A DNA stretch of 64,000 bases, taken from positions 62,001 to 126,000 of IMG/VR virus record IMGVR_UViG_3300032322_002561; one strand, 5' to 3'. Below, in pieces: positions 6,989 to 29,481 of this stretch. Each line of letters starts with the position of its first letter. The first letter of the stretch is position 1. A model generated the notes under the pieces. It did not search any database. It was not told the origin of the DNA and worked only from the letters and a program-made list of their open reading frames with translations. Made by a program: the position numbers and the translations under genes.

Positions 6989-7017
6989 ATTATAGCAAAA
7001 ATTGATTTATTGGTCAA
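6989..7017 (-). promoter_or_regulatory. Sigma70-type promoter
   Basis: TTGACC-N17-TATAAT upstream of the vWA gene. Confidence 0.75.
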
Positions 7018-13144: not shown

Positions 13145-13173
13145 ATTATATAAAATAATGTTTTTTAGGTCAA
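13145..13173 (-). promoter_or_regulatory. Sigma70-type promoter
   Basis: TTGACC-N17-TATAAT upstream of the ATPase and paralog array. Confidence 0.75.
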
Positions 13174-18688: not shown

Positions 18689-18741
18689 AGTATAACTTTA
18701 TTTAAACCTATTGTCAAGTAGATTTAATAGATTGTGTCTAT
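18689..18741 (-). promoter_or_regulatory. Sigma70 promoter with an upstream OxyR/LysR-like palindrome
   Basis: TTGACA-N17-TATACT (18689-18717) and ATAG-N7-CTAT (18727-18741). Confidence 0.6.
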
Positions 18742-18759: not shown

Positions 18760-19815
18760 TTATGACTTTTTTGGTCCAACGTATTCATGACTATAGCATA
18801 TTCGGCCAGCATCACGCACTGTAGTGGTGCCACCGTAGCCGGGCATTTTTCTAGCACTTCCGTCTTTGAGCAGGTAGCTTCCTAATCGGCTCTTTTTGTT
18901 GGTCGATGTCGGACGCCACAAAGGACTTTTTTCCCGGTGCTCGCCAAAACTGGGATGGGCTGTTTTTGAAAAATATCTTAGTCCGCGATCCACATAAATT
19001 TGGGCTATGGCATCACTAAAGGCAGTACCTATGCCCAGGCCTTGAAACTCTGGTAACACCACGGTTCTATGGCCACGCCAATAACTGTGTATGTCACGGT
19101 TAGTTGAATGTATGGCAGCGTGAAATGCCACAGGCTTGTCACCTATGAGTCCCAGGTAGCAGTGAACGCTACGACTCATTCTGGTGTCTAGATAGTGATA
19201 CTTACTGAAACGTCGCCAATCGTCCGGAGTTGTGCCTCGGATATGGAGTGTAATTTCTGGTCTCCCCAATCGAAGATGAAGTGACCTCCGTTGAGTTAAT
19301 TCCTGCTGGTCAGTGTCATAGATGTAATCTGGATCCAACCAGTCCGTGATGTCTCGGTGACAGCTGGCAATATACAAGGTACCTGGATTCTGGTCGTAGT
19401 ATCGTCTCACACTGTAGGCCAAGGCCTTGGCTGTGTCTCGATCTACTACACTTGTAAACTCATCTATGCACTGAATGCCTTGGTCCAAGGCCATGGCCAT
19501 TTCAAATCTGTGATACTCACCATTGCTGAGTGTGCCTGGCGGTCTGAACCACGCTGGTATGCTACGAAGCCCGCAAGCTAACAGTAGTTCTTCGCCACGT
19601 TCTGCGGTTGAAAAGTTTTCTATTACCGAGCTACACGGGCTCACAGTCACAGCCTGACGGGCTCCAAGACTGCGCAGGATTGTGCTTTTGCCCGAACCCG
19701 AAGTGCCCACAATCAACACGATGCCGTCGGTGGGTAATTTGGGTATGTTTATTGGAATTTCTTTGTAATCTTTGATGTCGTATCTAGTACGAATCTCATC
19801 AAGATAGTTGTTCAT
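18760..19815 (-). CDS. ABC-type ATPase fused to a GNAT acetyltransferase
   Basis: GTSGSGKS, LSNGE, IDEFTS, SCH; C-terminal VVLPEFQGLGIG. Confidence 0.8.
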   Translation of the reverse strand: MNNYLDEIRTRYDIKDYKEIPINIPKLPTDGIVLIVGTSGSGKSTILRSLGARQAVTVSPCSSVIENFSTAERGEELLLACGLRSIPAWFRPPGTLSNGEYHRFEMAMALDQGIQCIDEFTSVVDRDTAKALAYSVRRYYDQNPGTLYIASCHRDITDWLDPDYIYDTDQQELTQRRSLHLRLGRPEITLHIRGTTPDDWRRFSKYHYLDTRMSRSVHCYLGLIGDKPVAFHAAIHSTNRDIHSYWRGHRTVVLPEFQGLGIGTAFSDAIAQIYVDRGLRYFSKTAHPSFGEHREKSPLWRPTSTNKKSRLGSYLLKDGSARKMPGYGGTTTVRDAGRICYSHEYVGPKKS

Positions 19816-19980
19816 TCATCGACCTCGTCCGGCTGATCGTGTAGGTGGTTTTTTGCCAATCACTGGAGCACGTTGTTTTCCAGCTTTCTTTTCTGCCACT
19901 GGAGCTTCATCGTTTTCCATGTGGTGCGTGCCTTGTTTCTTGGCCAAGGCCTTTTTGAGAGTGTCGCTCATTTTGCTCAT
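19816..19980 (-). CDS. Small basic hypothetical protein
   Basis: MSKMSDTLKK... with AAAGGA RBS. Confidence 0.5.
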   Translation of the reverse strand: MSKMSDTLKKALAKKQGTHHMENDEAPVAEKKAGKQRAPVIGKKPPTRSAGRGR

Positions 19981-20082
19981 TTCACGTTCCTTTCGCTTTT
20001 GATCCAATCTATTCAACAAGGCCAACAGTTGCTCACGAGTCAGCATCTTGCCCCAAGTAGTGTTTTTTGTTGACATGTTAGT

Positions 20083-20158
20083 TGGTGCTGGAGAAAGGAA
20101 TCGAACCCTCGACATCCTGATTACAAATCAGGCGCTCTACCGTCTGAGCTACTCCAGC
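20083..20158 (-). tRNA. tRNA-Thr(UGU)
   Basis: Cloverleaf; CCTGA-TT-TGT-AA-TCAGG; encoded CCA. Confidence 0.95.
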
Positions 20159-20168
20159 ATAAAATTTA

Positions 20169-20381
20169 TTACACAGATGCTTCTTCTTTCACTTCTACTG
20201 CATGTTCTACATAGCCAGGTCTGCATTTTAATAAATCAATGCGACGTTGTATTTTGGCTTTTCGTTTGTTTTGTTGTGTTTTTTCTTTTAGATCAGTCAA
20301 CTGCTTGACGCTGAGACTGATGATTTTGACTTGACCCGACTTGGTATATCCTGGTTTACGACGATTGAGTTTTTTTGCCAT
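20169..20381 (-). CDS. Small basic hypothetical protein
   Basis: 70 aa, Lys/Arg-rich. Confidence 0.6.
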   Translation of the reverse strand: MAKKLNRRKPGYTKSGQVKIISLSVKQLTDLKEKTQQNKRKAKIQRRIDLLKCRPGYVEHAVEVKEEASV

Positions 20382-20398
20382 GATTGTGATCCTGTTTG

Positions 20399-21382
20399 TT
20401 AGATATGCTTACTTATAATTCTGTTCTCAAGGCCAACAAAGTTTAGTAACTGTTCAGCCCAGAGTTGATGTGATTTTTCAGTGGGATGACACGTGGCTTG
20501 ATTGTGATTGAGTGGGTTAGATTTCAACCAAGCCCAGCAAGCATCTGCACGTGTTACCTGATCAATCATGTATTCTCGATAATTGGAAAAGTAACCTTCG
20601 GGATCGTTGAGTCGATTAAAAGCTATACCACTAGCTGCGCCACTGATCAAAATTTGATCCAGTGTAATTGTCTTGTGGTCTTGATTGTTTTTTTCATTGT
20701 GATGGTAATTTATTTCAATCCAGGATTGTAAACTATCAAGCTCACTGTTGGTGGTGCTTGGTAAATCCACGGTAAAATTTCTTCCTACAATCAAGTCACA
20801 AGAAATATTCTCCCTCAGTTTGGCCAGCAGATCATACACAAACTGTTCTTCCTGTTCAAGATATTGCGTGACATCAGTTGGCACAGTTTTGCCCAATGCT
20901 TTATAGAAAGCACTGTTTCTACCGGTTTCTGTCAAGGTGGTGAACACAAATATGCGGTTATATCTAGAAAGATCAATGGGAGGTTTTATTGTGCAATGAC
21001 GAACAAGTTGTGACTCTATGTCTGTATCGGCATGTGCATCTGTGACCAGTTCGGGCCATCCAGGATCACGAATCAAATTGTAGTTTTCCTGAGTCAAAAA
21101 AGGAGTATGGTGTCCCAGTACATAGTTGTACAAGGCACACACAATGTCCAAATTGCCGCCACCGCATTTGCCCCAGTTAAACCAATCAGCATCAAGGTGA
21201 TCTGCAAGTCGCCTGCCATAACATTGTGCCAGCCTTGCATCATAGTCATCTATGTCTTTGTCATGGGCAATGGTACCAAGACTGTCACCAAATGTCCAGG
21301 AATCGCCCACTGATATTACAAGATTAGGACGATCCCGCACCAGTTGCAAGGTCAAATTCTGATGTCTAAACGACGGCATCAT
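20399..21382 (-). CDS. SGNH/GDSL hydrolase-like protein
   Basis: GDSWTFG, GGGN, CHPTEKSHQLWA. Confidence 0.7.
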   Translation of the reverse strand: MMPSFRHQNLTLQLVRDRPNLVISVGDSWTFGDSLGTIAHDKDIDDYDARLAQCYGRRLADHLDADWFNWGKCGGGNLDIVCALYNYVLGHHTPFLTQENYNLIRDPGWPELVTDAHADTDIESQLVRHCTIKPPIDLSRYNRIFVFTTLTETGRNSAFYKALGKTVPTDVTQYLEQEEQFVYDLLAKLRENISCDLIVGRNFTVDLPSTTNSELDSLQSWIEINYHHNEKNNQDHKTITLDQILISGAASGIAFNRLNDPEGYFSNYREYMIDQVTRADACWAWLKSNPLNHNQATCHPTEKSHQLWAEQLLNFVGLENRIISKHI

Positions 21383-21544
21383 TTAGTATTTGAGTCTGGC
21401 CTGTGTGTTAAAAGCTTTAGTAATGCGATGGGCAACACGTCTATGTTCCATGATCTGCCGTGTAGCATGCTCACGTTTTTCGCTTTTTGACCATTGACCG
21501 GCAATGGTACGACTTAATTCACCTGCTGATTGACGTTTTCCCAT
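21383..21544 (-). CDS. Small basic hypothetical protein (53 aa, not in ORF track)
   Basis: MGKRQSAGEL...ARLKY fills the gap between neighbours exactly. Confidence 0.55.
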   Translation of the reverse strand: MGKRQSAGELSRTIAGQWSKSEKREHATRQIMEHRRVAHRITKAFNTQARLKY

Positions 21545-21545
21545 G

Positions 21546-21770
21546 TTAGCGCACCTTGCTCAAGTAATCAACCATGCTGAACTGCCCGCTCTGTACTTCT
21601 TTGAGTGCGTCAATAGGAGTGACCCATGAGTTGGTTTCTCGGGCACGACGTTTCATTTCTCGCAAGCGTTGGCTGGCGGCTATGACCAAGTCATACCGTC
21701 CCGCACCACTCTTTTCAATACAGCGTTCAATATCAATTTCGCCACTGCGGCTTTCAATACGTGTGCTCAT
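21546..21770 (-). CDS. rpoZ: RNA polymerase omega subunit homolog
   Basis: IERCIEK..GRYDLVIAASQRLRE...ALKEV.SG pattern; GGAG RBS. Confidence 0.8.
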   Translation of the reverse strand: MSTRIESRSGEIDIERCIEKSGAGRYDLVIAASQRLREMKRRARETNSWVTPIDALKEVQSGQFSMVDYLSKVR

Positions 21771-21791
21771 GATTTCTCCAATTAAAAGTTT

Positions 21792-21820
21792 ATTATATAA
21801 CAATTTTTTTTGTTTGTCAA
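21792..21820 (-). promoter_or_regulatory. Consensus sigma70 promoter for rpoZ
   Basis: TTGACA-N17-TATAAT. Confidence 0.85.
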
Positions 21821-21898
21821 TGGTGCCCCGGGAAGGATTTGAACCTTCAACAGCTCCCTTCTGAGGAGAGTGCGTCTACCAGATTGCGCCACCGGGGT
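21821..21898 (-). tRNA. tRNA-Leu(CAG), short variable loop
   Basis: CTCTC-CT-CAG-AA-GGGAG; A73-CCA; A1:C72 mismatch. Confidence 0.88.
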
Positions 21899-21904
21899 CG
21901 TCCT

Positions 21905-22498
21905 TTACGTGGCTGTTTGTGTGGTACCATTTCCATTTTTAAAACCGATCACACCACCCTCGTCACGGATGCGTTTGAGCACATCTTCAAACAAGATAGG
22001 TGCGAAATCGGTTTGTTCCACACACACGCAATGATACCTGGTATCAATCACGTCGGTTTGTTTGCCATTGAAACCTGTGTGCATGACACGATTGGCATGC
22101 AGGTGTCCGTGGATGTTGACACCAAAACGTCCCAGACTTTCTGTGTGGATGGGAATATGGCTCAGGATCATTCCGTTCATGACATGATATGCACGCAGTT
22201 CACGGAAGTGCTCGCGATATTCTTCATCACGGAAGATGTCGTGGTTACCACGGATCAAGACCTTGTCACCGTTGAGCCTGCGCATGATGCCCAGAGCTTT
22301 CCTGTTGATCACAACATCGCCCAAGTGATAGACCTTGTCTGTGGGTCCGACACGCTCGTTCCAGGCTTTGACCATGAACTCATCCATTTCGTCGGGATCG
22401 TCCCAAGGTCTCAGCTTGGTCACACCATCGTTACGGGTAAAGCGACATACACCTGCGTGACCAAAGTGCGTGTCGCTGATTAAAAATACTGCTGGCAT
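21905..22498 (-). CDS. Calcineurin-like metallophosphoesterase
   Basis: SDTHFGH, HLGD, GNHD, LSHIP, HGHLH. Confidence 0.88.
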   Translation of the reverse strand: MPAVFLISDTHFGHAGVCRFTRNDGVTKLRPWDDPDEMDEFMVKAWNERVGPTDKVYHLGDVVINRKALGIMRRLNGDKVLIRGNHDIFRDEEYREHFRELRAYHVMNGMILSHIPIHTESLGRFGVNIHGHLHANRVMHTGFNGKQTDVIDTRYHCVCVEQTDFAPILFEDVLKRIRDEGGVIGFKNGNGTTQTAT

Positions 22499-22521
22499 AT
22501 TCGCCTCCTTTCTTATTTAAG

Positions 22522-22598
22522 TGGTACGGATGGAGGGACTCGAACCCTCAAAACTCGGATTTTAAGTCCGATACGTATACCTATTCCGTCACATCCGT
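22522..22598 (-). tRNA. tRNA-Leu(UAA), short variable loop
   Basis: TCGGA-CT-TAA-AA-TCCGA; encoded CCA. Confidence 0.92.
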
Positions 22599-22654
22599 AT
22601 CTAATTCTCGGATTCAACGCAGGCGGATTAGGCCAGACTTTATAGTGTGAATTG

Positions 22655-22728
22655 TGGAGCGGGATAAGGGAATCGAACCCTTGACCGAAGATTGGAAATC
22701 TGCTGTTTTGCCCCTAAACTAATCCCGC
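22655..22728 (-). tRNA. tRNA-Gly(UCC)
   Basis: GCG start, TT-TCC-AA loop, U73-CCA. Confidence 0.93.
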
Positions 22729-22732
22729 AAAA

Positions 22733-23827
22733 TTAGAATGTTTTTGGCAGTTTGATGATAGATCTTTTTTCACCCTGGCGTTTGACATCTAGAGTGGCAC
22801 AGTGTATACCACTGTCCCAGTACAAAAAGTGTCTTTGCTCACACACATGGCAGTCAATACCATGTGTTTTTAAGAATGCGAACAGATCCGGCATGTGTTG
22901 TGCAAATATTACATTGTGTCGATCAATTACCAAGACATTCAAATCAAAACACACCTGTTGGATGTACCCTCTCCAATTTTCTAAATAAGCATCTACCCAA
23001 TCTAGATCATGTCTGTTTTGTGCCTTGGAAAAATCTTTGATGTATTGCTGTCGTGATCGACCTTGACGCACAAACTTTGAAACATCGATCAAGCGTTTGC
23101 CTCGCAATACCAACGGAACCCACTCCACACCTGAATGAATTACAGTTTCGTCATCGATCATGAAAAATCCATGATCGATGTGACCAAAGTTGTTGCCACG
23201 TGCATGAGTATTGGGTACAATGTTGAAGTCAGGTAGATTTCTGCGTATCCAGTCAAGCCCTCTCTGTGTTCCTGGGCCGTTTATGTTTACGATCACACTG
23301 TCTCCAACACTGAACATGGTGGCTGTGTGCCACAACAATCTATCTACTAATTTTTGGCGATACGTGCTGCCGGCCATGTCCACATAGTATAGATCCTGCA
23401 TGGTCAAGTCTGACAGCATAGGTGCAGGTTGACTGACCCAGTTGTAGCCTTGATCAAACAAATTCTGAAAAATTTGATAGTAGCCGAGTCCATCAAAATA
23501 TCTGTCGGTCAAACTGGTGTAAGTCTGCAGTATGGTCGATCCCTGTACCTTGTACTGATCACGGGGGACCACAGGACTCATTGGAAAACTTATCTTGAAT
23601 TCCGGTAGAACTACACCGTTGTCATAGGCATATACCTTGGGTCTATGCACCTTGATATTGCCTTGATGTAAAAATTTTGCCAGATTGTCCAGATCTTGTT
23701 TGGTTTCTTCTAGTATTTGATAAAATCCTTGTGGATTCTTGTCGACAAAAAAAGCAGACACATCACTGGGTTGATAGATATCACCAACTATGACTTCTTG
23801 CAGTGGATCATATTCTGTAAAAATCAT
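22733..23827 (-). CDS. Amidinotransferase (glycine/inosamine amidinotransferase-like)
   Basis: EYDPLQEVIVG, PRD, GHID, NVLVID, GIHCATLD. Confidence 0.85.
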   Translation of the reverse strand: MIFTEYDPLQEVIVGDIYQPSDVSAFFVDKNPQGFYQILEETKQDLDNLAKFLHQGNIKVHRPKVYAYDNGVVLPEFKISFPMSPVVPRDQYKVQGSTILQTYTSLTDRYFDGLGYYQIFQNLFDQGYNWVSQPAPMLSDLTMQDLYYVDMAGSTYRQKLVDRLLWHTATMFSVGDSVIVNINGPGTQRGLDWIRRNLPDFNIVPNTHARGNNFGHIDHGFFMIDDETVIHSGVEWVPLVLRGKRLIDVSKFVRQGRSRQQYIKDFSKAQNRHDLDWVDAYLENWRGYIQQVCFDLNVLVIDRHNVIFAQHMPDLFAFLKTHGIDCHVCEQRHFLYWDSGIHCATLDVKRQGEKRSIIKLPKTF

Positions 23828-24944
23828 GATTTTTTAAATTTTTGTCAAGTGTATCAAAGTAGTCTTGATCCGCATTAAGCGGGATCACAAACTGCGAAGG
23901 TCCCATGGGTGTTCTAACAGCAAGCATAAGGCCAAACTGGTTTTGTACTTGATAGCGATTGTTTTCAAATATGGATCTGGCCTGACACGCTATCTGTTCG
24001 TGTCTTGACAACAACGATTGTTGTTCCAACAATGATAGAAATTCTAAAACACTGACCACTCCTGGTAGACTGAAACTGTAGGTAAATCCGTGTTCCCACC
24101 GAAAGGTCTTGGGCAAACTGTCATGTATGCGTTGATTGTACAGTGTCATGCTCAGTGGATAGTGACCAGCTGTGATTCCCTTGCCCATGGTAAAAATGTC
24201 TGGTTCCACTGGCAAACATTTCCAACCAAAAAAGTTACCAGTTTTGCCACCCCCGGTAAAAATATCATCTATGATAACAATCACATCATGTTGCTTTTGA
24301 ACATAAGCCACACGTTGCCAAAATTCTTCATTGTAAGGCTCAAGACCCCGAGCCCACGAACAGGTTTCTATAACCATACAACACACTGTGTTCCAATCAA
24401 TTGATTCAACATCAAAATCTGTGTTTATTTTTACAAAATTACTGTCAAGATCCAAAGTGTACAGTTTTTGTGTTGGCTTGCTCAAATTCTTGGTCAGCCA
24501 GGTGCTACCATGGTAACTGTTGGCAATGCTCACCACTCGATTACGTTGTAGTTGACCCCGACAGTGATGATATGCACTGGCCAATTTTACAGCACCTTCG
24601 TTGGCATCACTGCCGCTGAGTGCAAAAAAACTTCGGTAACCGCCACTGAGATTGAACAGTTTGTCGGCCAATTCATAGCTGGCGTGATTTATCCTAAGTG
24701 GTTGTGCTGGTCCAAAAAAATTATCGGCTATTTCAGGTTTTGTGCTTTTCAGTCTTTCATGCACCCGATCTAAAAATTCATCATTACCGGTATATCCCAG
24801 TACAAAACAACCATAGTGTAAGTGTGCATCCACAATTTTTTTATCATTATGCACAATGCCATACTTCCAATATTGAGATTCTGTGTGCAAGGTGGTTTGT
24901 TGAGTGCTGTAAATTAAACCCTTGTAATCAGTCGCAGTATTCAT
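23808..24944 (-). CDS. Class III PLP-dependent aminotransferase
   Basis: SGSDANEGAVK, SYHGST, DDIFTGGGKTG, GKGITAG, HGFTY. Confidence 0.88.
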   Translation of the reverse strand: MNTATDYKGLIYSTQQTTLHTESQYWKYGIVHNDKKIVDAHLHYGCFVLGYTGNDEFLDRVHERLKSTKPEIADNFFGPAQPLRINHASYELADKLFNLSGGYRSFFALSGSDANEGAVKLASAYHHCRGQLQRNRVVSIANSYHGSTWLTKNLSKPTQKLYTLDLDSNFVKINTDFDVESIDWNTVCCMVIETCSWARGLEPYNEEFWQRVAYVQKQHDVIVIIDDIFTGGGKTGNFFGWKCLPVEPDIFTMGKGITAGHYPLSMTLYNQRIHDSLPKTFRWEHGFTYSFSLPGVVSVLEFLSLLEQQSLLSRHEQIACQARSIFENNRYQVQNQFGLMLAVRTPMGPSQFVIPLNADQDYFDTLDKNLKNHDFYRI

Positions 24945-25020
24945 GCTGTGTTTCCTTTAGATACTTATAGACTAGATGTGGTTAGATCAAGGTTTTTTAT
25001 GATCTTGATACCAGACCAAC

Positions 25021-25099
25021 TGGTCGGAGTGGAAGGATTCGAACCTTCGGTCTCCTGCTCCCAAAGCAGGCGGATTAGACCAGACTTTCCTACACTCCG
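25021..25099 (-). tRNA. tRNA-Pro(UGG)
   Basis: CCTGC-TT-TGG-GA-GCAGG; encoded CCA. Confidence 0.93.
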
Positions 25100-25109
25100 A
25101 AAAATAAAA

Positions 25110-25505
25110 TTATTTGATGTTTTGCACAGTCTTGACCATGGTCTCCTCAGAGAGATGATCGTGCTTGAACTCTCTCACCGGGTGACCCAACAAGCCGGCA
25201 ATTGAGTTTTTAAAACTAATGCGTTTGTTGTTGTAGTCCCGTATGCGTATGGCTCTTCGACCAATCTCGTCCAAGGGCAACTGTTCTTCAACACCTGATT
25301 TCAATTGCCATTCTAACTCCCAAATGGCATTGTGTATGGCAGTCATGGCATCCACATTGTAGTTGAGTTCAGCACTTTGCGGAAGTTTTGCAAATTGCGC
25401 CTCATACCAGTCTAGTTCTATTTGGTTGGCACCATTGGTGCGTTGGTGTTTGACTCGTGCTATACAAAGCCGGTCGACTAATTCAAGAACCGGTAAAAAT
25501 TCCAT
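25110..25505 (-). CDS. Hypothetical helical protein
   Basis: 131 aa; AAAGGA RBS. Confidence 0.65.
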   Translation of the reverse strand: MEFLPVLELVDRLCIARVKHQRTNGANQIELDWYEAQFAKLPQSAELNYNVDAMTAIHNAIWELEWQLKSGVEEQLPLDEIGRRAIRIRDYNNKRISFKNSIAGLLGHPVREFKHDHLSEETMVKTVQNIK

Positions 25506-25548
25506 GTAGTTCCTTTCTGAAAATGATGAAATTACCTATCACTATCTA

Positions 25549-25622
25549 TGGCGCCGGTCTAAGGAATCGAACCTCAATCCTCGGTTTTGGAGACCGTTGT
25601 AATGCCATTATACTAGACCGAC
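25549..25622 (-). tRNA. tRNA-Trp(CCA)
   Basis: CT-CCA-AA loop; G73-CCA. Confidence 0.93.
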
Positions 25623-25626
25623 TATA

Positions 25627-25704
25627 TGGAGGTGAAGGTTGGATTCGAACCAACGGGGGTAGAGATTTGCAGTCACTTGCCTTGGACCACTCGGCCACTT
25701 CACC
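25627..25704 (-). tRNA. tRNA-Cys(GCA)
   Basis: CT-GCA-AA loop; U73-CCA. Confidence 0.92.
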
Positions 25705-25715
25705 ACAATTAAAAA

Positions 25716-25961
25716 CTATTCTTTGTCGATGTCTTGTTCAGCTCGACGTTCTTGTATGGTTTTTTCACGCCAGGTTTTGCGAGGATTAGCGCACAACAAG
25801 CAATGTGGTCTTCCACAATTCATGACATGGTGTTTGGCATATCTGTGGTATTCTTTTACTGTGATACCGTGCGCCTTGGCAATACGTACTTGTCTGATTT
25901 CAGCATCTCTAGTTTTGCTGATGCGTCGACTGTGTTTGATACGTGTCTGTTCATTGCTCAT
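25716..25961 (-). CDS. Small basic protein with a CGRPHCLLC motif
   Basis: 81 aa; AGGAGG RBS; possible zinc ligands. Confidence 0.7.
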   Translation of the reverse strand: MSNEQTRIKHSRRISKTRDAEIRQVRIAKAHGITVKEYHRYAKHHVMNCGRPHCLLCANPRKTWREKTIQERRAEQDIDKE

Positions 25962-26015
25962 GATTGCCTCCTGACTACGATACTTATGAATACATTAATC
26001 ACTGACATACATTAT

Positions 26016-26089
26016 TGGTTGCGGGACCAGGAATCGAACCTGGGACTCGAGCTTATGAGACTCGCGTTTTACCGCTTCACTATCCCGCG
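26016..26089 (-). tRNA. tRNA-Met(CAU), initiator-like
   Basis: CGCGGGA/TCCCGCA with C1:A72 mismatch; CT-CAT-AA loop. Confidence 0.9.
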
Positions 26090-26107
26090 ATAGCATGGTG
26101 AAGATGT

Positions 26108-26266
26108 TTAACTTGGGATCAATCTTGGCAAATAAGGCACTGATCTAGGCCCGTGAAGTTGTTGTAAAAGTTTTCTAGCTTCTTCGGCAGTTTCAGCCCC
26201 CACTCGGGCCTTGAATTCTTGTCCACCCGGACCTGGCTCTCTGATTGTTGCTTCCCATAATTTCAT
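26108..26266 (-). CDS. Small hypothetical protein (52 aa, not in ORF track)
   Basis: GGGAG RBS; MKLWEATIRE...PRLIPS. Confidence 0.6.
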   Translation of the reverse strand: MKLWEATIREPGPGGQEFKARVGAETAEEARKLLQQLHGPRSVPYLPRLIPS

Positions 26267-26283
26267 ATGAACTCCCATAAAAA

Positions 26284-26358
26284 TGGTACACCGTAGGAGA
26301 ATCGAACTCCTCTTACCTGCGTGAAAGGCGGGTGTCCTAACCGATAGACGAACGGTGC
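26284..26358 (-). tRNA. tRNA-Glu(UUC)
   Basis: CT-TTC-AC loop; encoded CCA. Confidence 0.93.
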
Positions 26359-26366
26359 ATACAACT

Positions 26367-26458
26367 TGGCGGAGACTATTGGATTCGAACCAATGATACA
26401 GATTACTCCATATGACGGTTTAGCAAACCGTTGCCTTCAGCCACTCGGCCAAGTCTCC
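26367..26458 (-). tRNA. tRNA-Ser(GCU)
   Basis: TT-GCT-AA loop, long variable arm, G73-CCA. Confidence 0.94.
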
Positions 26459-26461
26459 ATT

Positions 26462-26666
26462 TATTGTTGAGACCACTGTTGTATGTTTAAGAGACTTCAA
26501 ACGAACCCGTAAAGGTTTGCGCCGTTTTTATACGTCTCTCCCAACCTCATCGTTCACGCAGTATCAGCAGACTGCTATTTCCCAGATCTTGGGCTGACTT
26601 GGCCGGGATGGTTATCTTCCCCAACAGTTGGGATTGCTTACTCTTTCGCTCACAATCTCAACAATA
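26462..26666 (-). ncRNA. Unassigned structured RNA, about 205 nt
   Basis: Perfect 11-bp terminal stem, several internal helices and a possible pseudoknot; abuts tRNA-Ser. Confidence 0.6.
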
Positions 26667-26685
26667 CGCACTCTGTGGAGTGCGT

Positions 26686-26785
26686 TTGCTATCGCTCGAA
26701 TTTTTCGCTCCACAAAAGGAGTTCCATCCTCGAGGCCGCCCGTTTGTGTTAGTTATAGTGTAACACAGGCCCTCGTTGCCTGCAA
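26686..26785 (-). ncRNA. Second unassigned structured RNA candidate
   Basis: GC-rich intergenic stretch with nested stems TGTGTTA/TAACACA, CGAGG/CCTCG, CTCC/GGAG. Confidence 0.4.
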
Positions 26786-26797
26786 CCACTGTGTCAG

Positions 26798-26974
26798 TTA
26801 TTTGTCTTCTTCTGCTAACCGACGAAATTGTTCCTGCGCCCGAATCATTGCGGCCGCACGATCGATCTTGTTCTGAAACAGACGTTGTTTCTGCTCTTCG
26901 GTCAAAAAGGCCGAAATATGGTCATAAGCCTGTTTCACAATTTGATCGTTTAATTTTGTGTAATCAATTGACAT
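26798..26974 (-). CDS. Small hypothetical protein (58 aa, not in ORF track)
   Basis: GAGG RBS; MSIDYTKLND...AEEDK. Confidence 0.55.
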   Translation of the reverse strand: MSIDYTKLNDQIVKQAYDHISAFLTEEQKQRLFQNKIDRAAAMIRAQEQFRRLAEEDK

Positions 26975-26992
26975 CTTTTTCCTCTATAAAAT

Positions 26993-27026
26993 AAAAAACC
27001 CCGGAGTGTTTAATTCCAGGGTCTTT
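26993..27026 (-). terminator. Terminator/attenuator hairpin ahead of the tRNA operon
   Basis: AAAGACCCTGGA...TCCGGGGTTTTTT. Confidence 0.7.
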
Positions 27027-27048
27027 GAATATTGTATGATATTTTATA

Positions 27049-27150
27049 CTATTCACTGCCCTGAATCGGATCTTCACAAATTGCCCATAGCGCCACACTC
27101 CCGCTGAAATTGGGTTGTGGTGCAAGATGTGTTAATTTGTGATTCAACAT
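27049..27150 (-). CDS. Putative leader peptide (33 aa)
   Basis: ATG 6 nt after TATAAT; followed by a terminator. Confidence 0.45.
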   Translation of the reverse strand: MLNHKLTHLAPQPNFSGSVALWAICEDPIQGSE

Positions 27151-27156
27151 AATAGT

Positions 27157-27185
27157 ATTATACGAGAATATTTATACCAGGTCAA
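27157..27185 (-). promoter_or_regulatory. Sigma70 promoter with an embedded TATAAATA late-type motif
   Basis: TTGACC-TGGTATAAATATTCTCG-TATAAT. Confidence 0.8.
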
Positions 27186-27199
27186 CCAATTTGGTCAAC

Positions 27200-27223
27200 A
27201 AAAAAGGCTCCTAAGAGCCTTTT
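27200..27223. terminator. Intrinsic terminator
   Basis: AAAAGGCTC-CTAA-GAGCCTTTT. Confidence 0.8.
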
Positions 27224-27229
27224 ATACTA

Positions 27230-27457
27230 CTAGGCTTGATCCACGAACCGTTTGAGTTCTTCAGCCTTGGCTATGATATCCGTGCTGGACGGAAAATCTG
27301 GCAAGGTAGGGAACTGCAAAGTTTCTCGATTGGCTTCGGTAATCTTGCTGTGATATTCCTGCATTCGTGCTTCGCGATTTTGGAATACGGGTGTGGTCAA
27401 TATTTCATTGGCCATTTTGAGTAGATCCAGACGGATCTCGTAGGGTGTTTTGCTCAT
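27230..27457 (-). CDS. Phage hypothetical protein
   Basis: MSKTPYEIRLDLLKMA...IIAKAEELKRFV; AGGAG RBS. Confidence 0.75.
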   Translation of the reverse strand: MSKTPYEIRLDLLKMANEILTTPVFQNREARMQEYHSKITEANRETLQFPTLPDFPSSTDIIAKAEELKRFVDQA

Positions 27458-27544
27458 GATTACTCCTTTCTGTGTGTGATGTGTGTTAAACACGAGCTTG
27501 TAGTTTTCACTACACATTTACTTATCAAGCCAAATCAAGGTCAT

Positions 27545-27571
27545 AAAAAAAGCTCCCGGAGGAGCTTTTTT
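27545..27571. terminator. Intrinsic terminator
   Basis: AAAAAAAGCTCC-CGGA-GGAGCTTTTTT. Confidence 0.8.
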
Positions 27572-27586
27572 GTTCACTTTTAAAAA

Positions 27587-28327
27587 TTAATTAAAAGTCT
27601 TTGTCAAGCCTACTACCACTGCATTTTTGTAGAGCTTTTGACCGCCTACAGTGTTTGCAGTTTCAAAGGTTGATGTGGTGCCAGTATTGGTAAAATACTT
27701 GACGCTCAAGTCATATGCCTTGGGTAGAGAATAAACAAATCCAGCATTGATGTCGTTGTAATCATATGCCGAGCTGTTGGCCACATTGGTACGACCATAG
27801 TGAGCAACCACAGCTAGATTTTTAACAACAGGAACTGGTAGTTTGCCATCCACTTGTGTATAGTTTGTGCCACGAGCATTGGCTGTACCGAAGTAACCGT
27901 TGCCCAAGGTTTGGCTATACTTGGCAGAAATAATGTCTTTGTAACCTACGCCGACAAAACCTTCATAGGTGTCAAAGTTGCTGCCAGTGGCTGCAGAAGT
28001 GGTTGCACGTGGATAGAAATAGTTGTAGCTACCGATGTCAATCGAGATGCCCTTGAAAATTTCTTTCTTGTAACCAGCATAGAGGTCGCTTTCTACACCT
28101 GCACCGTTGGTATAAACATTGCTGGAAACACTGCTGTTCCAGTTACCAACATAGAAGCCACTCTTGTGTGCATAGTCGATGCCGCCCTGAACTGCAGGAG
28201 CATTTTGGGTTTGGCTAACACCGCGGAAACGGTAGTCGCTGGTCAAACCTAAATTGCCGGTGAGTTGAGCTTGAGCCGAGGCAACAAAGCCAGCGGACAA
28301 GGCTAATGCGATTAATAGTTTTTTCAT
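27587..28327 (-). CDS. TorF/Gcw_chp-family putative outer-membrane porin
   Basis: Signal peptide; SDYRFRGVSQT..PAVQGGID..GFYVGNWNS, ESDLYAGY; near-terminal Phe. Confidence 0.85.
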   Translation of the reverse strand: MKKLLIALALSAGFVASAQAQLTGNLGLTSDYRFRGVSQTQNAPAVQGGIDYAHKSGFYVGNWNSSVSSNVYTNGAGVESDLYAGYKKEIFKGISIDIGSYNYFYPRATTSAATGSNFDTYEGFVGVGYKDIISAKYSQTLGNGYFGTANARGTNYTQVDGKLPVPVVKNLAVVAHYGRTNVANSSAYDYNDINAGFVYSLPKAYDLSVKYFTNTGTTSTFETANTVGGQKLYKNAVVVGLTKTFN

Positions 28328-28402
28328 GCTTGAGATTTCCTTTTAAAAGAATGCTGGGTGATCACCCAACAAGTTATTTAGTGGTTTTCACTGATGGCCA
28401 AC

Positions 28403-28430
28403 AAAAAAGCGACATTTCTGCCGCTTTTTT
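28403..28430. terminator. Intrinsic terminator after the tmRNA
   Basis: AAAAAAGCGACA-TTTC-TGCCGCTTTTTT. Confidence 0.75.
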
Positions 28431-28790
28431 GACTATTTTGGGTAACAAGGCATAGTTGCCCCGGAGATCATGCCGCTAAGGCAAAGACCTCGTCGTTGGC
28501 TGCGTTTGCAGTTATCGTTGTGCTTCTACAACCGGGTGTCCCCAGTCCTAACGGGTTTCGCATTCCCGTGTAGATCCTGTCCATACTTGTTGCCACGTCG
28601 AAACTGTGTCATCCCCACCAAAAAGACCTAGCAATTCTGGATCAATGTGCCAGCTCCAGCTCATGCTGTAATTCCACAAATTCAAGGGTGGAAAACTATC
28701 GGTCCATTGCTCCATAAAAGTCCTTTTGGTGGAGATGCCGGGTTCTGCCCCCGGGTCCGCAACACCTTTCTGTCAAGGCATTAAACTACA
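28431..28790 (-). ncRNA. ssrA: Circularly permuted (two-piece) tmRNA
   Basis: Acceptor piece ending CATCTCC-A-CCA (3' end at 28727) precedes the GGGGATG 5' end (28616); G3:U70 pair; tag ANAANDEVFALAA-stop at 28509..28468; outer ends approximate. Confidence 0.92.
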
Positions 28791-28798
28791 ATTCTTTT

Positions 28799-28828
28799 AT
28801 TGTACTACAAAAAATATTTATTGGTCAA
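28799..28828 (-). promoter_or_regulatory. Promoter for the tmRNA
   Basis: TTGACC-N18-TACAAT with TAAATA in the spacer. Confidence 0.65.
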
Positions 28829-28935
28829 TTAAACAAACCGTATGTCCAACACCATAATTCCAGGCTGAGTTTGTACAGCAACCACATGGCCACCAAGCCT
28901 GTGCTAAAGATTAAAGTTAATTGAGTTTTATTCAT
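28825..28935 (-). CDS. Hydrophobic micropeptide (36 aa)
   Basis: MNKTQLTLIFSTGLVAMWLLYKLSLELWCWTYGLFN. Confidence 0.5.
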   Translation of the reverse strand: MNKTQLTLIFSTGLVAMWLLYKLSLELWCWTYGLFN

Positions 28936-28972
28936 AGATCCGACCCACCACCACGTTTAACGAACGTGGAAA

Positions 28973-29044
28973 CTAGTAAAACACCAACAAGAAAACTGCC
29001 ACCACAACCACAATGCCAATGGCAAAACTGTAGTCTGGTTCCAC
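28973..29044 (-). CDS. Hydrophobic micropeptide (23 aa)
   Basis: GTG start; MEPDYSFAIGIVVVVAVFLLVFY. Confidence 0.45.
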   Translation of the reverse strand: MEPDYSFAIGIVVVVAVFLLVFY

Positions 29045-29045
29045 G

Positions 29046-29138
29046 CTATTTCCCAAACAAGTGTGCTACAATGCCCATGGCCACAAACACTGCGATGGCT
29101 GCAATGGCTGCCCAAGGAAGGTTTTGAAATATTTTCAT
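29046..29138 (-). CDS. Hydrophobic micropeptide (30 aa)
   Basis: MKIFQNLPWAAIAAIAVFVAMGIVAHLFGK; AAGGA RBS, ATGA overlap. Confidence 0.5.
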   Translation of the reverse strand: MKIFQNLPWAAIAAIAVFVAMGIVAHLFGK

Positions 29139-29218
29139 TGTTCGTCCTTGTGTTCGTTAAGCCACATGATGCCATAACACACAACTATGGCCAACAAGGC
29201 AAAAAATATCAGCCACAT
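29135..29218 (-). CDS. Hydrophobic micropeptide (27 aa)
   Basis: MWLIFFALLAIVVCYGIMWLNEHKDEQ. Confidence 0.5.
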   Translation of the reverse strand: MWLIFFALLAIVVCYGIMWLNEHKDEQ

Positions 29219-29219
29219 G

Positions 29220-29390
29220 TTAATTATAACCTTTTATGTTTTTGCCGTCAATCTTGGGATTACCTTTTGCTGCTACATTTTCTAATTGACGTGCTCGATC
29301 TCGTTCGGGCGGTAGCGGGCCGCAACCCAACCTGTCCCACTCTGAATCAGAGTAGTAGTATTTTTCTACGGGTTTTTTGACCTGTTCCAT
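29220..29390 (-). CDS. Small hypothetical protein (56 aa)
   Basis: MEQVKKPVEKYYYSDSEWDRLGCGPLP...; TAAATA upstream. Confidence 0.55.
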   Translation of the reverse strand: MEQVKKPVEKYYYSDSEWDRLGCGPLPPERDRARQLENVAAKGNPKIDGKNIKGYN

Positions 29391-29406
29391 AGCATAGATA
29401 TTTAGT

Positions 29407-29481
29407 TGGTGGGCCTTGAAAGAATTGAACTTTCACTCCATCGATTATGAGTCGATTGCTTTACCATTAAGCTAAAGGCCC
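29407..29481 (-). tRNA. tRNA-Ile2(CAU) (lysidine type); elongator Met not excluded
   Basis: GGGCCTT acceptor stem; ATCGA-CT-CAT-AA-TCGAT; encoded CCA. Confidence 0.88.

What the first reader, a model, noticed from the sequence alone, without database searches (positions are those of the whole stretch)
21546..21820. Phage-encoded RNA polymerase omega subunit under a perfect sigma70 promoter
Seen: a divergent RpoZ whose N-terminus (MSTRIESRSGEI) differs from the MAR motif, which in E. coli contributes to ppGpp site 1. Inference: it could replace host omega and change the stringent response or sigma preference during starvation.
Basis: partly seen in the sequence, partly recalled or inferred. 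Interest (0 to 1): 0.6.

Follow-up and report, generated by a model that had tools for sequence, protein, structure and literature searches.

The report
Jumbo-phage RNA polymerase omega subunit
An uncultured 340-kb-class phage carries its own copy of omega, the smallest subunit of bacterial RNA polymerase. It sits behind a conserved consensus promoter, and the N-terminal motif that helps bacterial omega bind the starvation signal ppGpp has been replaced, so the phage may re-equip the host polymerase rather than only redirect it.

Summary
Window 21546-21770 (-) is a 74-aa ORF with a GGAG ribosome site. It lies behind the only perfect TTGACA-17-TATAAT in the 64-kb window.

The protein is a true but very divergent omega (RpoZ) homolog:
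- It misses the curated Pfam and NCBIfam cut-offs as a single sequence.
- Its family profile hits only omega chains in the PDB (E 1.6e-5) and aligns to bacterial omega with hhalign probability 97.8%.
- Its model's top 46 fold hits are all omega chains.
- A complex model seats it on E. coli beta' at the omega site (ipSAE 0.74, best control 0.00).

The window is part of a jumbo-phage record. No beta, beta' or sigma70 domain was found in it, and no beta' or sigma70 domain in a complete 337-kb relative.

Omega proved to be a single-copy gene in a whole uncultured phage lineage. Some members keep the bacterial N-terminal MAR motif. The window's subclade replaced M-A-R with S-G/S-E/Q behind a conserved 8-residue extension. 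It diverged fast (37% identity where neighbouring genes keep 80%) and is now under purifying selection (dN/dS about 0.11). It is always followed by a clade-specific 52-aa protein.

The consequences for ppGpp or sigma choice are inferred, not shown. I found no paper describing a phage omega.

The parts
21792..21820 (-). Consensus sigma70-type promoter: -35 TTGACA at 21815-21820, 17-nt spacer, -10 TATAAT at 21792-21797, followed by an A+T-rich discriminator.
   Evidence: 12 of 12 positions. (only perfect match in the window; 0.04 expected). (hexamers and spacing conserved in 15 of 15 loci, spacer sequence variable).
21776..21779 (-). Shine-Dalgarno GGAG, 5 nt upstream of the ATG.
   Evidence: GGAG or GAGG conserved in all 15 loci.
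21546..21770 (-). Phage omega (RpoZ-like) CDS, 74 aa plus stop. Residues 1-8 are a conserved extension. Residues 9-11 (S-G-E) stand in the place of M-A-R. Residues 12-64 form the omega core. Residues 66-73 form a C-terminal helix carrying a virus-type D-Y-L-x-K motif.
21383..21544 (-). 53-aa basic protein that starts 2 nt after the omega stop (start 2-10 nt after the omega stop in the related loci). It is specific to this omega subclade and has no known family.
   Evidence: adjacent in all 14 loci whose sequence extends downstream. (present in 5 of 5 genomes of this subclade). (absent from 5 of 5 related genomes with other omega types). (no Pfam, PDB or Atlas match).
21821..21898 (-). tRNA-Leu(CAG), ending 1 nt before the -35 hexamer. 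The same arrangement is kept in most related loci.
   Evidence: tRNA 3' end with CCA abuts TTGACA in 11 of 15 loci.
21905..22498 (-). Metallophosphoesterase (phrog_547), a conserved neighbour. I used it as a yardstick for divergence.
   Evidence: 80% identical to the ortholog in a relative whose omega is only 37% identical.
20399..21382 (-). 327-aa ORF whose start overlaps the stop of the 53-aa gene, with a weak DUF6071-like match. It is a variable insert, absent at this place in the other loci of the subclade.

Best explanation
This is a phage-encoded substitute for the omega subunit of the host RNA polymerase (RNAP).

Proposed mechanism:
1. Unmodified host sigma70 holoenzyme transcribes it early and strongly. 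The promoter is consensus, its discriminator is A+T-rich, and the ribosome site is good. The 52-aa partner gene is transcribed with it.
2. The protein takes the omega seat on host beta' through the conserved omega core (G-R-Y-D-L-V, A-x-Q-R-L-R-E, A-L-K-E-V).
3. The M-A-R residues that complete ppGpp site 1 with beta' R362, R417 and K615 are replaced. An acidic or neutral residue stands at the R3 position, and a conserved 8-residue extension lies in front of it. RNAP carrying the phage omega should therefore bind ppGpp poorly, or not at all, at site 1.
4. Such RNAP would stay omega-loaded and sigma70-competent. This favours phage transcription in slow-growing or stringently responding hosts.

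Status of each step:
- Shown: homology, conservation, purifying selection, a conserved promoter, one copy per genome, and no phage beta' or sigma70 domain found.
- Predicted in silico: binding at the omega site.
- Inferred: displacement of host omega, loss of ppGpp site 1, and benefit to the phage.

My odds: true omega homolog 0.97; binds host beta' at the omega site 0.8; the N-terminal change alters the ppGpp response 0.35-0.4. The confidence given for this explanation (0.45) is for the whole chain.
For: Homology:
- The family profile hits 23 PDB sequences, all RNAP omega, best E 1.6e-5.
- All 29 family members have PF01192 as their top Pfam match.
- hhalign against bacterial omega: probability 97.8%, E 1.2e-12.
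- AF2 model pLDDT 80.3. Its top 46 Foldseek PDB hits are all omega chains, with query-normalised TM-score (TMq) 0.46-0.63.

Binding:
- The complex model with E. coli beta' 330-940 plus 1130-1407 scores ipSAE 0.74; the best of 3 controls scores 0.00.
- The runs share at least 84% of contacts and partner pLDDT is at least 72.
- In calibration, 58 of 80 solved complexes and 2 of 110 mismatched pairs reached the mark.
- The interface covers beta' 364, 417-419, 438, 474-488, 613-615, 905, 910-912 and 1360-1365, and omega residues 5, 7-10, 12-17, 24-40 and 50-56.

The partner must be host RNAP:
- No beta' (PF00623) or sigma70_r2 (PF04542) domain in the own record, nor in the 337-kb complete and 93%-complete relatives.
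- No beta domain (PF00562) in the own record (not searched in the relatives).
- One omega per genome.

Selection:
- pN 0.136, pS 0.625, dN/dS about 0.11.
- The 12 N-terminal codons are equally constrained, with pN 0.148 and pS 0.60.

MAR loss:
- 30 of 30 bacterial omegas start MAR.
- Site-1-minus RNAP is made by omega delta 2-5 plus beta' R362A, R417A and K615A (PMC13192712).
- The MAR motif is described as serving (p)ppGpp binding (PMC6416229).

Promoter:
-.
- Six near-consensus promoters lie on the coding strand, against 0.49 expected.

Context from the literature:
- Omega-less RNAP shifts from sigma70 to sigmaS (PMC7700224).
- Phages do counter the stringent response (PMC13483052).
Against: - No experiment and no RNA data. 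No RNA run holds the locus.
- The host is unknown, so E. coli beta' is a stand-in. A complex prediction for a family with hundreds of solved complexes may pass from memory (caveat printed).
- The tool lists which residues touch but itemises few pairs. I cannot say that the extension itself lies in the ppGpp pocket.
- In E. coli, ppGpp site 2 (with DksA) matters more than site 1, and a rpoZ deletion keeps a stringent response in vivo (PMC7700224). Loss of site 1 alone may therefore have a modest effect.
- Close relatives of this phage keep MAR. A MAR-less omega is thus not needed for the life style of the lineage.
- No other ppGpp-related gene (MazG, RelA_SpoT, HD_4) was found in three genomes of the subclade.
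- How a phage omega would displace omega already bound to core enzyme is not addressed.
Confidence: 0.45

Rival explanations
1. Supply model. The phage simply floods the cell with a working omega so that every RNAP core is omega-loaded, well folded and biased to sigma70, which reads the phage's consensus promoters. The N-terminal change would be drift, or adaptation to the host's beta', and irrelevant to ppGpp.
For: - The whole phage lineage keeps one omega, including members with an intact MAR. The basic benefit therefore does not need MAR loss.
- Omega-less RNAP favours sigmaS over sigma70 (PMC7700224).
- The window has six near-consensus sigma70-type promoters.
Against: - The N-terminal extension is as constrained as the core. 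M1, I5, S7 and R8 are invariant in 29 sequences.
- Omega diverged to 37% identity while the DNA polymerase and the neighbouring gene stayed at 80-81%. This points to a change of function in this subclade rather than drift.
Confidence: 0.25
2. Docking-platform model. The phage omega gives RNAP a phage-specific surface (the N-terminal extension and/or the D-Y-L-x-K C-terminal helix). A phage regulator binds this surface and steers transcription. The first candidate is the co-transcribed 52-aa basic protein.
For: - The 52-aa gene follows omega, its start 2-10 nt after the omega stop, in all 14 loci whose sequence extends downstream.
- It is present in 5 of 5 genomes of this subclade and absent from 5 of 5 relatives with other omega types.
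- There is a precedent for an activator acting through omega: GafA of the Rhodobacter gene transfer agent (PMC9638019, title and abstract).
- The C-terminal motif is shared by viral omegas and absent from bacterial ones.
Against:
- The partner has no detectable family or fold.
- Adjacent genes alone are weak evidence of binding.
Confidence: 0.2
3. It is not a working RNAP subunit. It could be a chance resemblance, a decaying host-derived passenger, or host DNA wrongly joined to a viral contig.
For: - The single sequence is below the curated Pfam and NCBIfam cut-offs.
- One copy lies in a bin labelled Legionella.
Against: - Profile, fold and complex evidence all point to omega.
- There are at least 349 close relatives, and dN/dS is about 0.11.
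- 62 viral sequences form one side of a 100/100 branch away from bacterial omegas.
- The Legionella-labelled bin has its own canonical rpoZ elsewhere, and its phage-type copy is on a 3.3-kb contig.
- Across 401 Pseudomonadota genomes the best bacterial omega scores 32.9 bits against 140.6 for the phage type.
Confidence: 0.03

Closest known systems
Bacterial RNA polymerase omega subunit (RpoZ; Pfam PF01192 RNA_pol_Rpb6, NCBIfam TIGR00690), e.g. E. coli omega
   Same: - Same helical core, with the conserved R-[FY]-D-L-V, A-x-x-R-x-R and A-L-[RK]-E-[IV] blocks.
- Same predicted seat on beta'.
- Same fold by model.
- Similar size.
   Different: - Encoded by a virus.
- About 27% identical to E. coli-type omega and below the curated model cut-offs.
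- M-A-R is replaced by S-[GS]-[EQ], preceded by a conserved 8-residue extension.
- The loop between helices 2 and 3 is about 3 residues shorter and lacks the D-K pair that is invariant in the 18 aligned bacterial omegas.
- It has a virus-type basic C-terminal helix.
- It is not in a gmk-rpoZ-spoT context.
Other viral omegas of the same uncultured jumbo-phage lineage (found here in IMG/VR; auto-annotated by JGI; not found in the literature I searched)
   Same: - They fall on the same side of the 100/100 branch that separates viral from bacterial omegas.
- One copy per genome.
- They lie in the tRNA-rich region, often just after a tRNA.
- They share a [DE]-Y-L C-terminal motif.
- Their phages are close kin, with DNA polymerase 62-81% identical.
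   Different: - 23 loci keep MAR and 40 have M-x-E-S-R in front of A-R. The window's subclade has lost A-R altogether.
- The window's subclade sits on a long branch (1.45).
- Only it has the invariant consensus promoter in every locus and the 52-aa partner.
Phage proteins that re-program host RNAP (phage sigma factors such as T4 gp55, and small RNAP-binding proteins such as gp39 of Thermus phage P23-45, PMC3950348)
   Same: An early phage product that changes the properties of the host enzyme instead of replacing it.
   Different: Those are sigma factors or foreign binders. This is a homolog of a core subunit that would take that subunit's own seat. This comparison rests on my general knowledge plus the abstract of PMC3950348.

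Membership tests
RNAP omega / Rpb6 (PF01192, TIGR00690) | The single sequence scores above the curated family cut-off. | tested here: not met
   PF01192 16.5 bits against 26, and TIGR00690 18.5 bits against 23.6. Some family members do carry a precomputed PF01192 hit.
RNAP omega / Rpb6 (PF01192, TIGR00690) | Profile-level sequence homology to omega over the conserved core. | tested here: met
   hmmsearch of A1 against the PDB gives 23 hits, all omega, best E 1.6e-5. All 29 members hit PF01192, best E 8.7e-7. hhalign A1 against A3 gives probability 97.8%, E 1.2e-12, over 55 columns.
RNAP omega / Rpb6 (PF01192, TIGR00690) | Omega fold (helical bundle). | tested here: met
   The AF2 model built on a 55-row alignment has pLDDT 80.3 and pTM 0.66, with helices at 14-21, 25-46, 52-61 and 66-72. 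The top 46 Foldseek PDB hits are all omega chains, with query-normalised TM-score (TMq) 0.46-0.63 and probability up to 0.98. The best E-value is only 0.29, as is usual for so small a protein.
RNAP omega / Rpb6 (PF01192, TIGR00690) | Binds beta' at the omega site (double-psi barrel region and C-terminal tail). | tested here: met
   By prediction only. ipSAE 0.74, best control 0.00, contacts at beta' 474-488, 417-419, 613-615, 905-912 and 1360-1365. E. coli beta' was a stand-in, and the pass may come from memory of solved complexes. Binding itself needs the bench.
Proteobacterial omega with ppGpp site 1 | N-terminal M-A-R motif (omega residues 2-5 contact ppGpp). | tested here: not met
   Phage S9-[GS]10-[EQ]11 align with M1-A2-R3. 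30 of 30 sampled Pseudomonadota omegas start MAR.
Proteobacterial omega with ppGpp site 1 | Chromosomal gmk-rpoZ-spoT neighbourhood. | tested here: not met
   The gene lies between phage tRNA genes and small phage ORFs. For contrast, the bacterial locus is shown.
Virus-only omega clade of the uncultured ~340-kb phage lineage | Falls inside the viral branch and shares its C-terminal [DE]-Y-L motif. | tested here: met
   Tree: viral against bacterial split 100/100, window's subclade 100/99, sister to L118 and L076 at 96/92. Alignment. The tree rests on only 79 columns, so inner forks are weak.

The most novel reading that the evidence does not exclude
Phages of this lineage replace a core subunit of the host RNA polymerase with their own version. 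In the window's subclade, the swapped-in omega, perhaps together with its 52-aa partner, removes or plugs ppGpp site 1. The phage-loaded enzyme would then ignore part of the host's starvation alarm. The variation of the N-terminus across the lineage (MAR, extended AR, no AR) would be a natural series of ppGpp-site variants.
Probability: 0.3. Interest if true: 0.85.

Novelty: new variant of a known kind. Interest (0 to 1): 0.66.

Why it matters
Phages are known to redirect host RNAP with sigma factors, small binders and covalent modification. I found no report of a phage that supplies its own copy of a core subunit:
- No paper holds 'jumbo', 'phage' and 'omega subunit' together.
- Two broad jumbo-phage reviews never mention omega.
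- The protein matches no PHROG family at E <= 0.01.
- No genuine cultured-phage record holds an omega.

Omega is the least understood RNAP subunit, and its role in ppGpp sensing and sigma choice is still debated (PMC7700224). This lineage offers a natural set of omega variants that differ exactly at the ppGpp-contacting N-terminus. The proteins are about 70 residues long and easy to make, and they can be tested directly on reconstituted RNAP.

If the effect is real, it adds a new way for phages to escape stringent-response restriction, a topic now being studied with other mechanisms (PMC13483052).

Tried and rejected
- The PHROGs scan of the omega and of its partner gave nothing.
- tblastn of the phage omega against 50,697 phage records gave no match at E <= 0.01.
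- tblastn of two bacterial omegas against the same records gave 9 hits. All look like host DNA or mislabelled bacterial contigs. I checked one: 'Acinetobacter phage MD-2021a' is a gmk-rpoZ-spoT chromosomal locus.
- The AF2 monomer built on the shallow alignment A1 was poor (pLDDT 60) and I did not use it. The deeper alignment A4 gave a usable model.
- The search for sequencing runs found DNA holders only, and one small-share 'lake water metagenome'. There was no RNA run, so I did not use read laying and have no evidence on expression or the transcription start.
- Host identification stays unresolved:
  - The tmRNA is of the permuted type with a partial alpha_tmRNA match.
  - The nearest cultured phages infect Rhizobiales.
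  - The A-A-Q-R-x-R-E block looks, by my own recall of omega sequences, like alphaproteobacterial omega. No tool named these genomes.
  - One 3.3-kb copy sits in a Legionella-labelled bin.
- No MazG, RelA_SpoT or HD_4 gene was found in three genomes of the subclade.
- The 52-aa partner has no Pfam, PDB or Atlas lead.
- An in-frame 'RIES' just upstream of MAR in one bacterial lineage resembles phage residues 4-7. It covers the Shine-Dalgarno sequence, matches only 8 of 12 bases, and is one lineage. I treat it as coincidence.
- I did not run the large representative-protein search, because the family scans and the genome surveys had already settled the identity.

Full report
1. WHAT IS IN THE SEQUENCE

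On the minus strand, 21770 down to 21546 is a 74-aa ORF beginning MSTRIESRSGEI.
- A GGAG lies 5 nt before the ATG.
- TTGACA, a 17-nt spacer and TATAAT lie at 21820-21792. This is the only perfect match in the 64-kb window; shuffles give 0.04.
- The -35 hexamer begins one base after the 3' end of tRNA-Leu(CAG) at 21821-21898.
- A TTG-started 85-aa reading of the ORF would run through the -10 hexamer. The ATG at 21770 is therefore the start.
- The 96-aa ORF on the opposite strand (21574-21864) has nothing to support it.

2. WHERE THE WINDOW COMES FROM

- It is bases 62001-126000 of a 236,309-bp IMG/VR virus record, judged 68% complete.
- It holds a T4-type DNA polymerase (phrog_262, E 1e-193), a phage phosphoesterase, 11 tRNAs and a permuted tmRNA.
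- The DNA polymerase is nearest to that of Sinorhizobium phage Phosso (49.6%) and Agrobacterium phage Atu_ph07 (45.8%), then to the 121Q and CBB type of jumbo phages.
- No cultured phage matches at the DNA level beyond one tRNA.

3. IS IT OMEGA?

- Alone, the protein is below the curated cut-offs: PF01192 16.5 against 26 bits, TIGR00690 18.5 against 23.6 bits.
- The word search found 349 close relatives in metagenomes. Several are on contigs of 144-353 kb, and JGI names many of them omega automatically.
- A profile of 29 relatives (A1) hits 23 distinct PDB sequences. All are RNAP omega, and the best E is 1.6e-5.
- All 29 have PF01192 as their top family.
- I took bacterial omegas from a survey of 401 Pseudomonadota genomes and aligned 18 of them (A3). 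hhalign of A1 against A3 gives probability 97.8% and E 1.2e-12 over 55 columns.
- With a 55-row alignment (A4), AlphaFold2 gives pLDDT 80.3. The top 46 Foldseek hits in the PDB are all omega chains, with query-normalised TM-score (TMq) 0.46-0.63. The E-values are not significant for so small a protein.
- Verdict: a true, very divergent omega homolog.

4. DOES IT FIT THE OMEGA SEAT?

- I ran a complex prediction with E. coli beta' 330-940 and 1130-1407. It scored ipSAE 0.74, and the best of three controls scored 0.00.
- The runs agree in at least 84% of contacts, and partner pLDDT is at least 72.
- In the tool's calibration, 58 of 80 solved complexes and 2 of 110 mismatched pairs reached the mark.
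- The confident interface covers beta' 364, 417-419, 438, 474-488, 613-615, 905, 910-912 and 1360-1365.
- The interface includes beta' 417-419 and 613-615. R417 and K615, with R362, are the beta' residues mutated to make site-1-minus RNAP, together with omega delta 2-5 (PMC13192712).
- Omega residues 5, 7-10 and 12-17 are part of the confident interface.
- Caveats: E. coli is a stand-in for an unknown host, the family has hundreds of solved complexes, and a model is not a measurement.

5. WHOSE POLYMERASE?

- No beta' (PF00623) or sigma70 region 2 (PF04542) domain was found in the own record. None was found either in a relative with terminal repeats judged 100% complete (337,119 bp), or in a 93%-complete relative.
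- No beta domain (PF00562) was found in the own record. I did not search the relatives for it.
- Each genome has exactly one omega.
- The partner is therefore the host enzyme.
- Six promoters within one mismatch of the consensus, all with a 17-nt spacer, lie on the coding strand of the window. Shuffles give 0.49. This also fits dependence on host sigma70 holoenzyme.

6. THE N-TERMINUS

- All three alignments put phage I12 opposite bacterial V4.
- S9, G/S10 and E/Q11 therefore stand where M1, A2 and R3 stand. Eight more residues (M-x-x-R-I-E-S-R) come first.
- In 29 sequences M1, I5, S7 and R8 are invariant.
- All 30 bacterial omegas that I extracted begin MAR[VI]T.
- The MAR motif is cited as the (p)ppGpp-binding feature of omega (PMC6416229, citing Hauryliuk 2015).
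- Across 15 loci, pN is 0.136 and pS 0.625 (dN/dS about 0.11). The first 12 codons are no freer, with pN 0.148 and pS 0.60.

7. CONSERVATION OF THE EXPRESSION SIGNALS AND OF A PARTNER GENE

- All 15 loci of this type were compared: 14 IMG/VR contigs plus the window.
- The two promoter hexamers, their spacing and the ribosome site are kept in every one, while the spacer and the untranslated leader vary. That is the pattern of selection on the promoter itself.
- The stretch after the -10 hexamer is A+T-rich in all of them. From general knowledge of stringent control, this is the kind of promoter that ppGpp does not shut down.
- Two to ten bases after the omega stop starts a 51-53-aa basic protein. 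It is conserved in every locus with downstream sequence and has no Pfam, PDB or Atlas lead.

- A scan of IMG/VR with the bacterial profile found 106 viral contigs with omega-like genes; 80 were kept.
- Six look like host DNA. The other 74 fall into classes by N-terminus:
  - MAR kept: 23 loci.
  - M-x-E-S-R in front of A-R: 40 loci.
  - M-T-S-R-L-T: 7 loci.
  - Odd ones: 4 loci.
- The tree has 87 rows and 79 columns, so inner forks are weak.
  - The 62 unique viral sequences in it lie on one side of a 100/100 branch. The 21 bacterial omegas and 4 bacterial-like rows lie on the other.
  - The window's type is a 100/99 clade on a long branch (1.45). It is nested among the viral ones and sister to two other MAR-less sequences (96/92).
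- The phages carrying the other types are close kin of this one. Their DNA polymerases are 81, 80, 68, 67 and 62% identical to the window's.
- Against the closest relative, the neighbouring phosphoesterase is 80% identical but omega only 37%. Omega of this subclade therefore changed fast and then froze. That is the signature of a change of function rather than decay.
- The 52-aa partner is present in 5 of 5 genomes of the subclade and absent from 5 of 5 relatives with other omega types, three of them at least 95% complete.

9. NOT A BACTERIAL GENE

- Pattern scans of 185,579 species genomes found the phage type once. It lies on a 3.3-kb contig of a bin labelled Legionella.
- That bin has its own canonical rpoZ elsewhere, at 80.7 bits.
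- In 401 Pseudomonadota genomes the best bacterial omega scores 32.9 bits against the phage profile, where the phage type scores 140.6.
- The nearest ESM Atlas clusters have 131, 78 and 60 members and are 76-96% viral.

10. MECHANISM AND RIVALS

Best-supported reading: an early, strongly expressed phage omega takes the omega seat on host RNAP. Lacking MAR, it leaves ppGpp site 1 incomplete or occupied, and it keeps the enzyme omega-loaded and sigma70-friendly.

Points against the ppGpp part:
- Site 2 with DksA is the stronger site in E. coli, and a rpoZ deletion still shows stringent control in vivo (PMC7700224).
- Relatives manage with MAR.
- No other alarmone gene is present.

Rivals:
- Plain supply of omega.
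- A phage-specific docking surface for a regulator such as the 52-aa partner. The precedent is GafA acting through omega (PMC9638019).
- Non-function, which the evidence largely excludes.

11. KNOWN OR NEW?

- Searches of about 8.4 million papers found nothing on a phage-encoded omega.
- A 224-genome comparative study of jumbo phages and a 2026 review do not contain the word.
- The PHROGs scan gave no match for the protein at E <= 0.01.
- The only omegas in 50,697 phage records are host DNA or mislabelled bacterial contigs.
- The fold and family are known, and pipelines already label these proteins. I therefore rate it a new variant of a known kind, and not categorically new.

12. LIMITS

- The host is unknown.
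- There is no expression data.
- Binding is predicted only.

Noticed in passing
window 28377-28819 (-): A phage-encoded permuted (two-piece type) tmRNA with tag peptide ANAANDEVFALAA. It scores 107.7 bits on Rfam tmRNA_permuted and has a partial alpha_tmRNA match. This is a possible hint to the host group.
   Followed up: partly
window 20083-29481 (-): Eleven tRNA genes, all on the minus strand, interleaved with small ORFs. The omega genes of related phages also sit in such tRNA-rich regions, often directly after a tRNA.
   Followed up: partly
window 6989-7017, 13145-13173, 18689-18717, 27157-27185, 29223-29251 (all -): Five more promoters within one mismatch of TTGACA-17-TATAAT, all on the coding strand. 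Six matches in total against 0.49 expected, and no shuffle reached six. This is probably the phage's class of host-sigma70 early promoters.
   Followed up: no
loci L050-L128 (IMG/VR contigs), e.g. L054:2001-2246, L093:1986-2204, L114:1995-2237: Related jumbo phages carry omegas with other N-termini: MAR kept, M-x-E-S-R in front of A-R, or M-T-S-R-L-T. This is a natural series of variants at the ppGpp-contacting end.
   Followed up: partly
window 20169-20381 (-) and 19816-20115 (-): Two small basic proteins flank tRNA-Thr: one of 70 aa, and one of 99 aa ending in P-P-T-R-S-A-G-R-G-R. Both are conserved near omega in most related loci and have no significant family match.
   Followed up: no
window 18760-19815 (-): A 351-aa protein with a P-loop/ABC-type ATPase N-terminus and a GNAT acetyltransferase C-terminus (phrog_11143, E 7e-79). 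Jumbo-phage GNATs have been proposed to modify host RNAP or ribosomal proteins (PMC7824862).
   Followed up: no
locus L016 / L019 (CAISKC010000395.1, 3,281 bp): A phage-type omega with its 52-aa neighbourhood sits on a short contig binned into an 'uncultured Legionella sp.' MAG, which has its own rpoZ on another contig. This is either mis-binning or a weak host hint.
   Followed up: partly
locus L129 (CAKLQH020000003.1 144712-156939, in the phage collection): A record named 'Acinetobacter phage MD-2021a' carries pilus genes and gmk-rpoZ-spoT. This is bacterial chromosome filed as phage.
   Followed up: yes
loci L022, L025, L026, L039, just upstream of rpoZ: In one bacterial lineage the in-frame untranslated leader reads R-I-E-S (L022, L025) or R-V-E-S (L026, L039) directly before M-A-R, like phage residues 4-7. 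It overlaps the Shine-Dalgarno sequence and matches only 8 of 12 bases, so it is probably coincidence.
   Followed up: yes
locus L118:2189-2350, L093:779-943, L063:1060-1245: Relatives with other omega types have a different conserved small basic protein of about 53 aa (motif H-V-R-G-A-F-I-R-S) near omega. In L118 it directly follows omega, where the window has its 52-aa partner. The A2 profile does not detect it.
   Followed up: no
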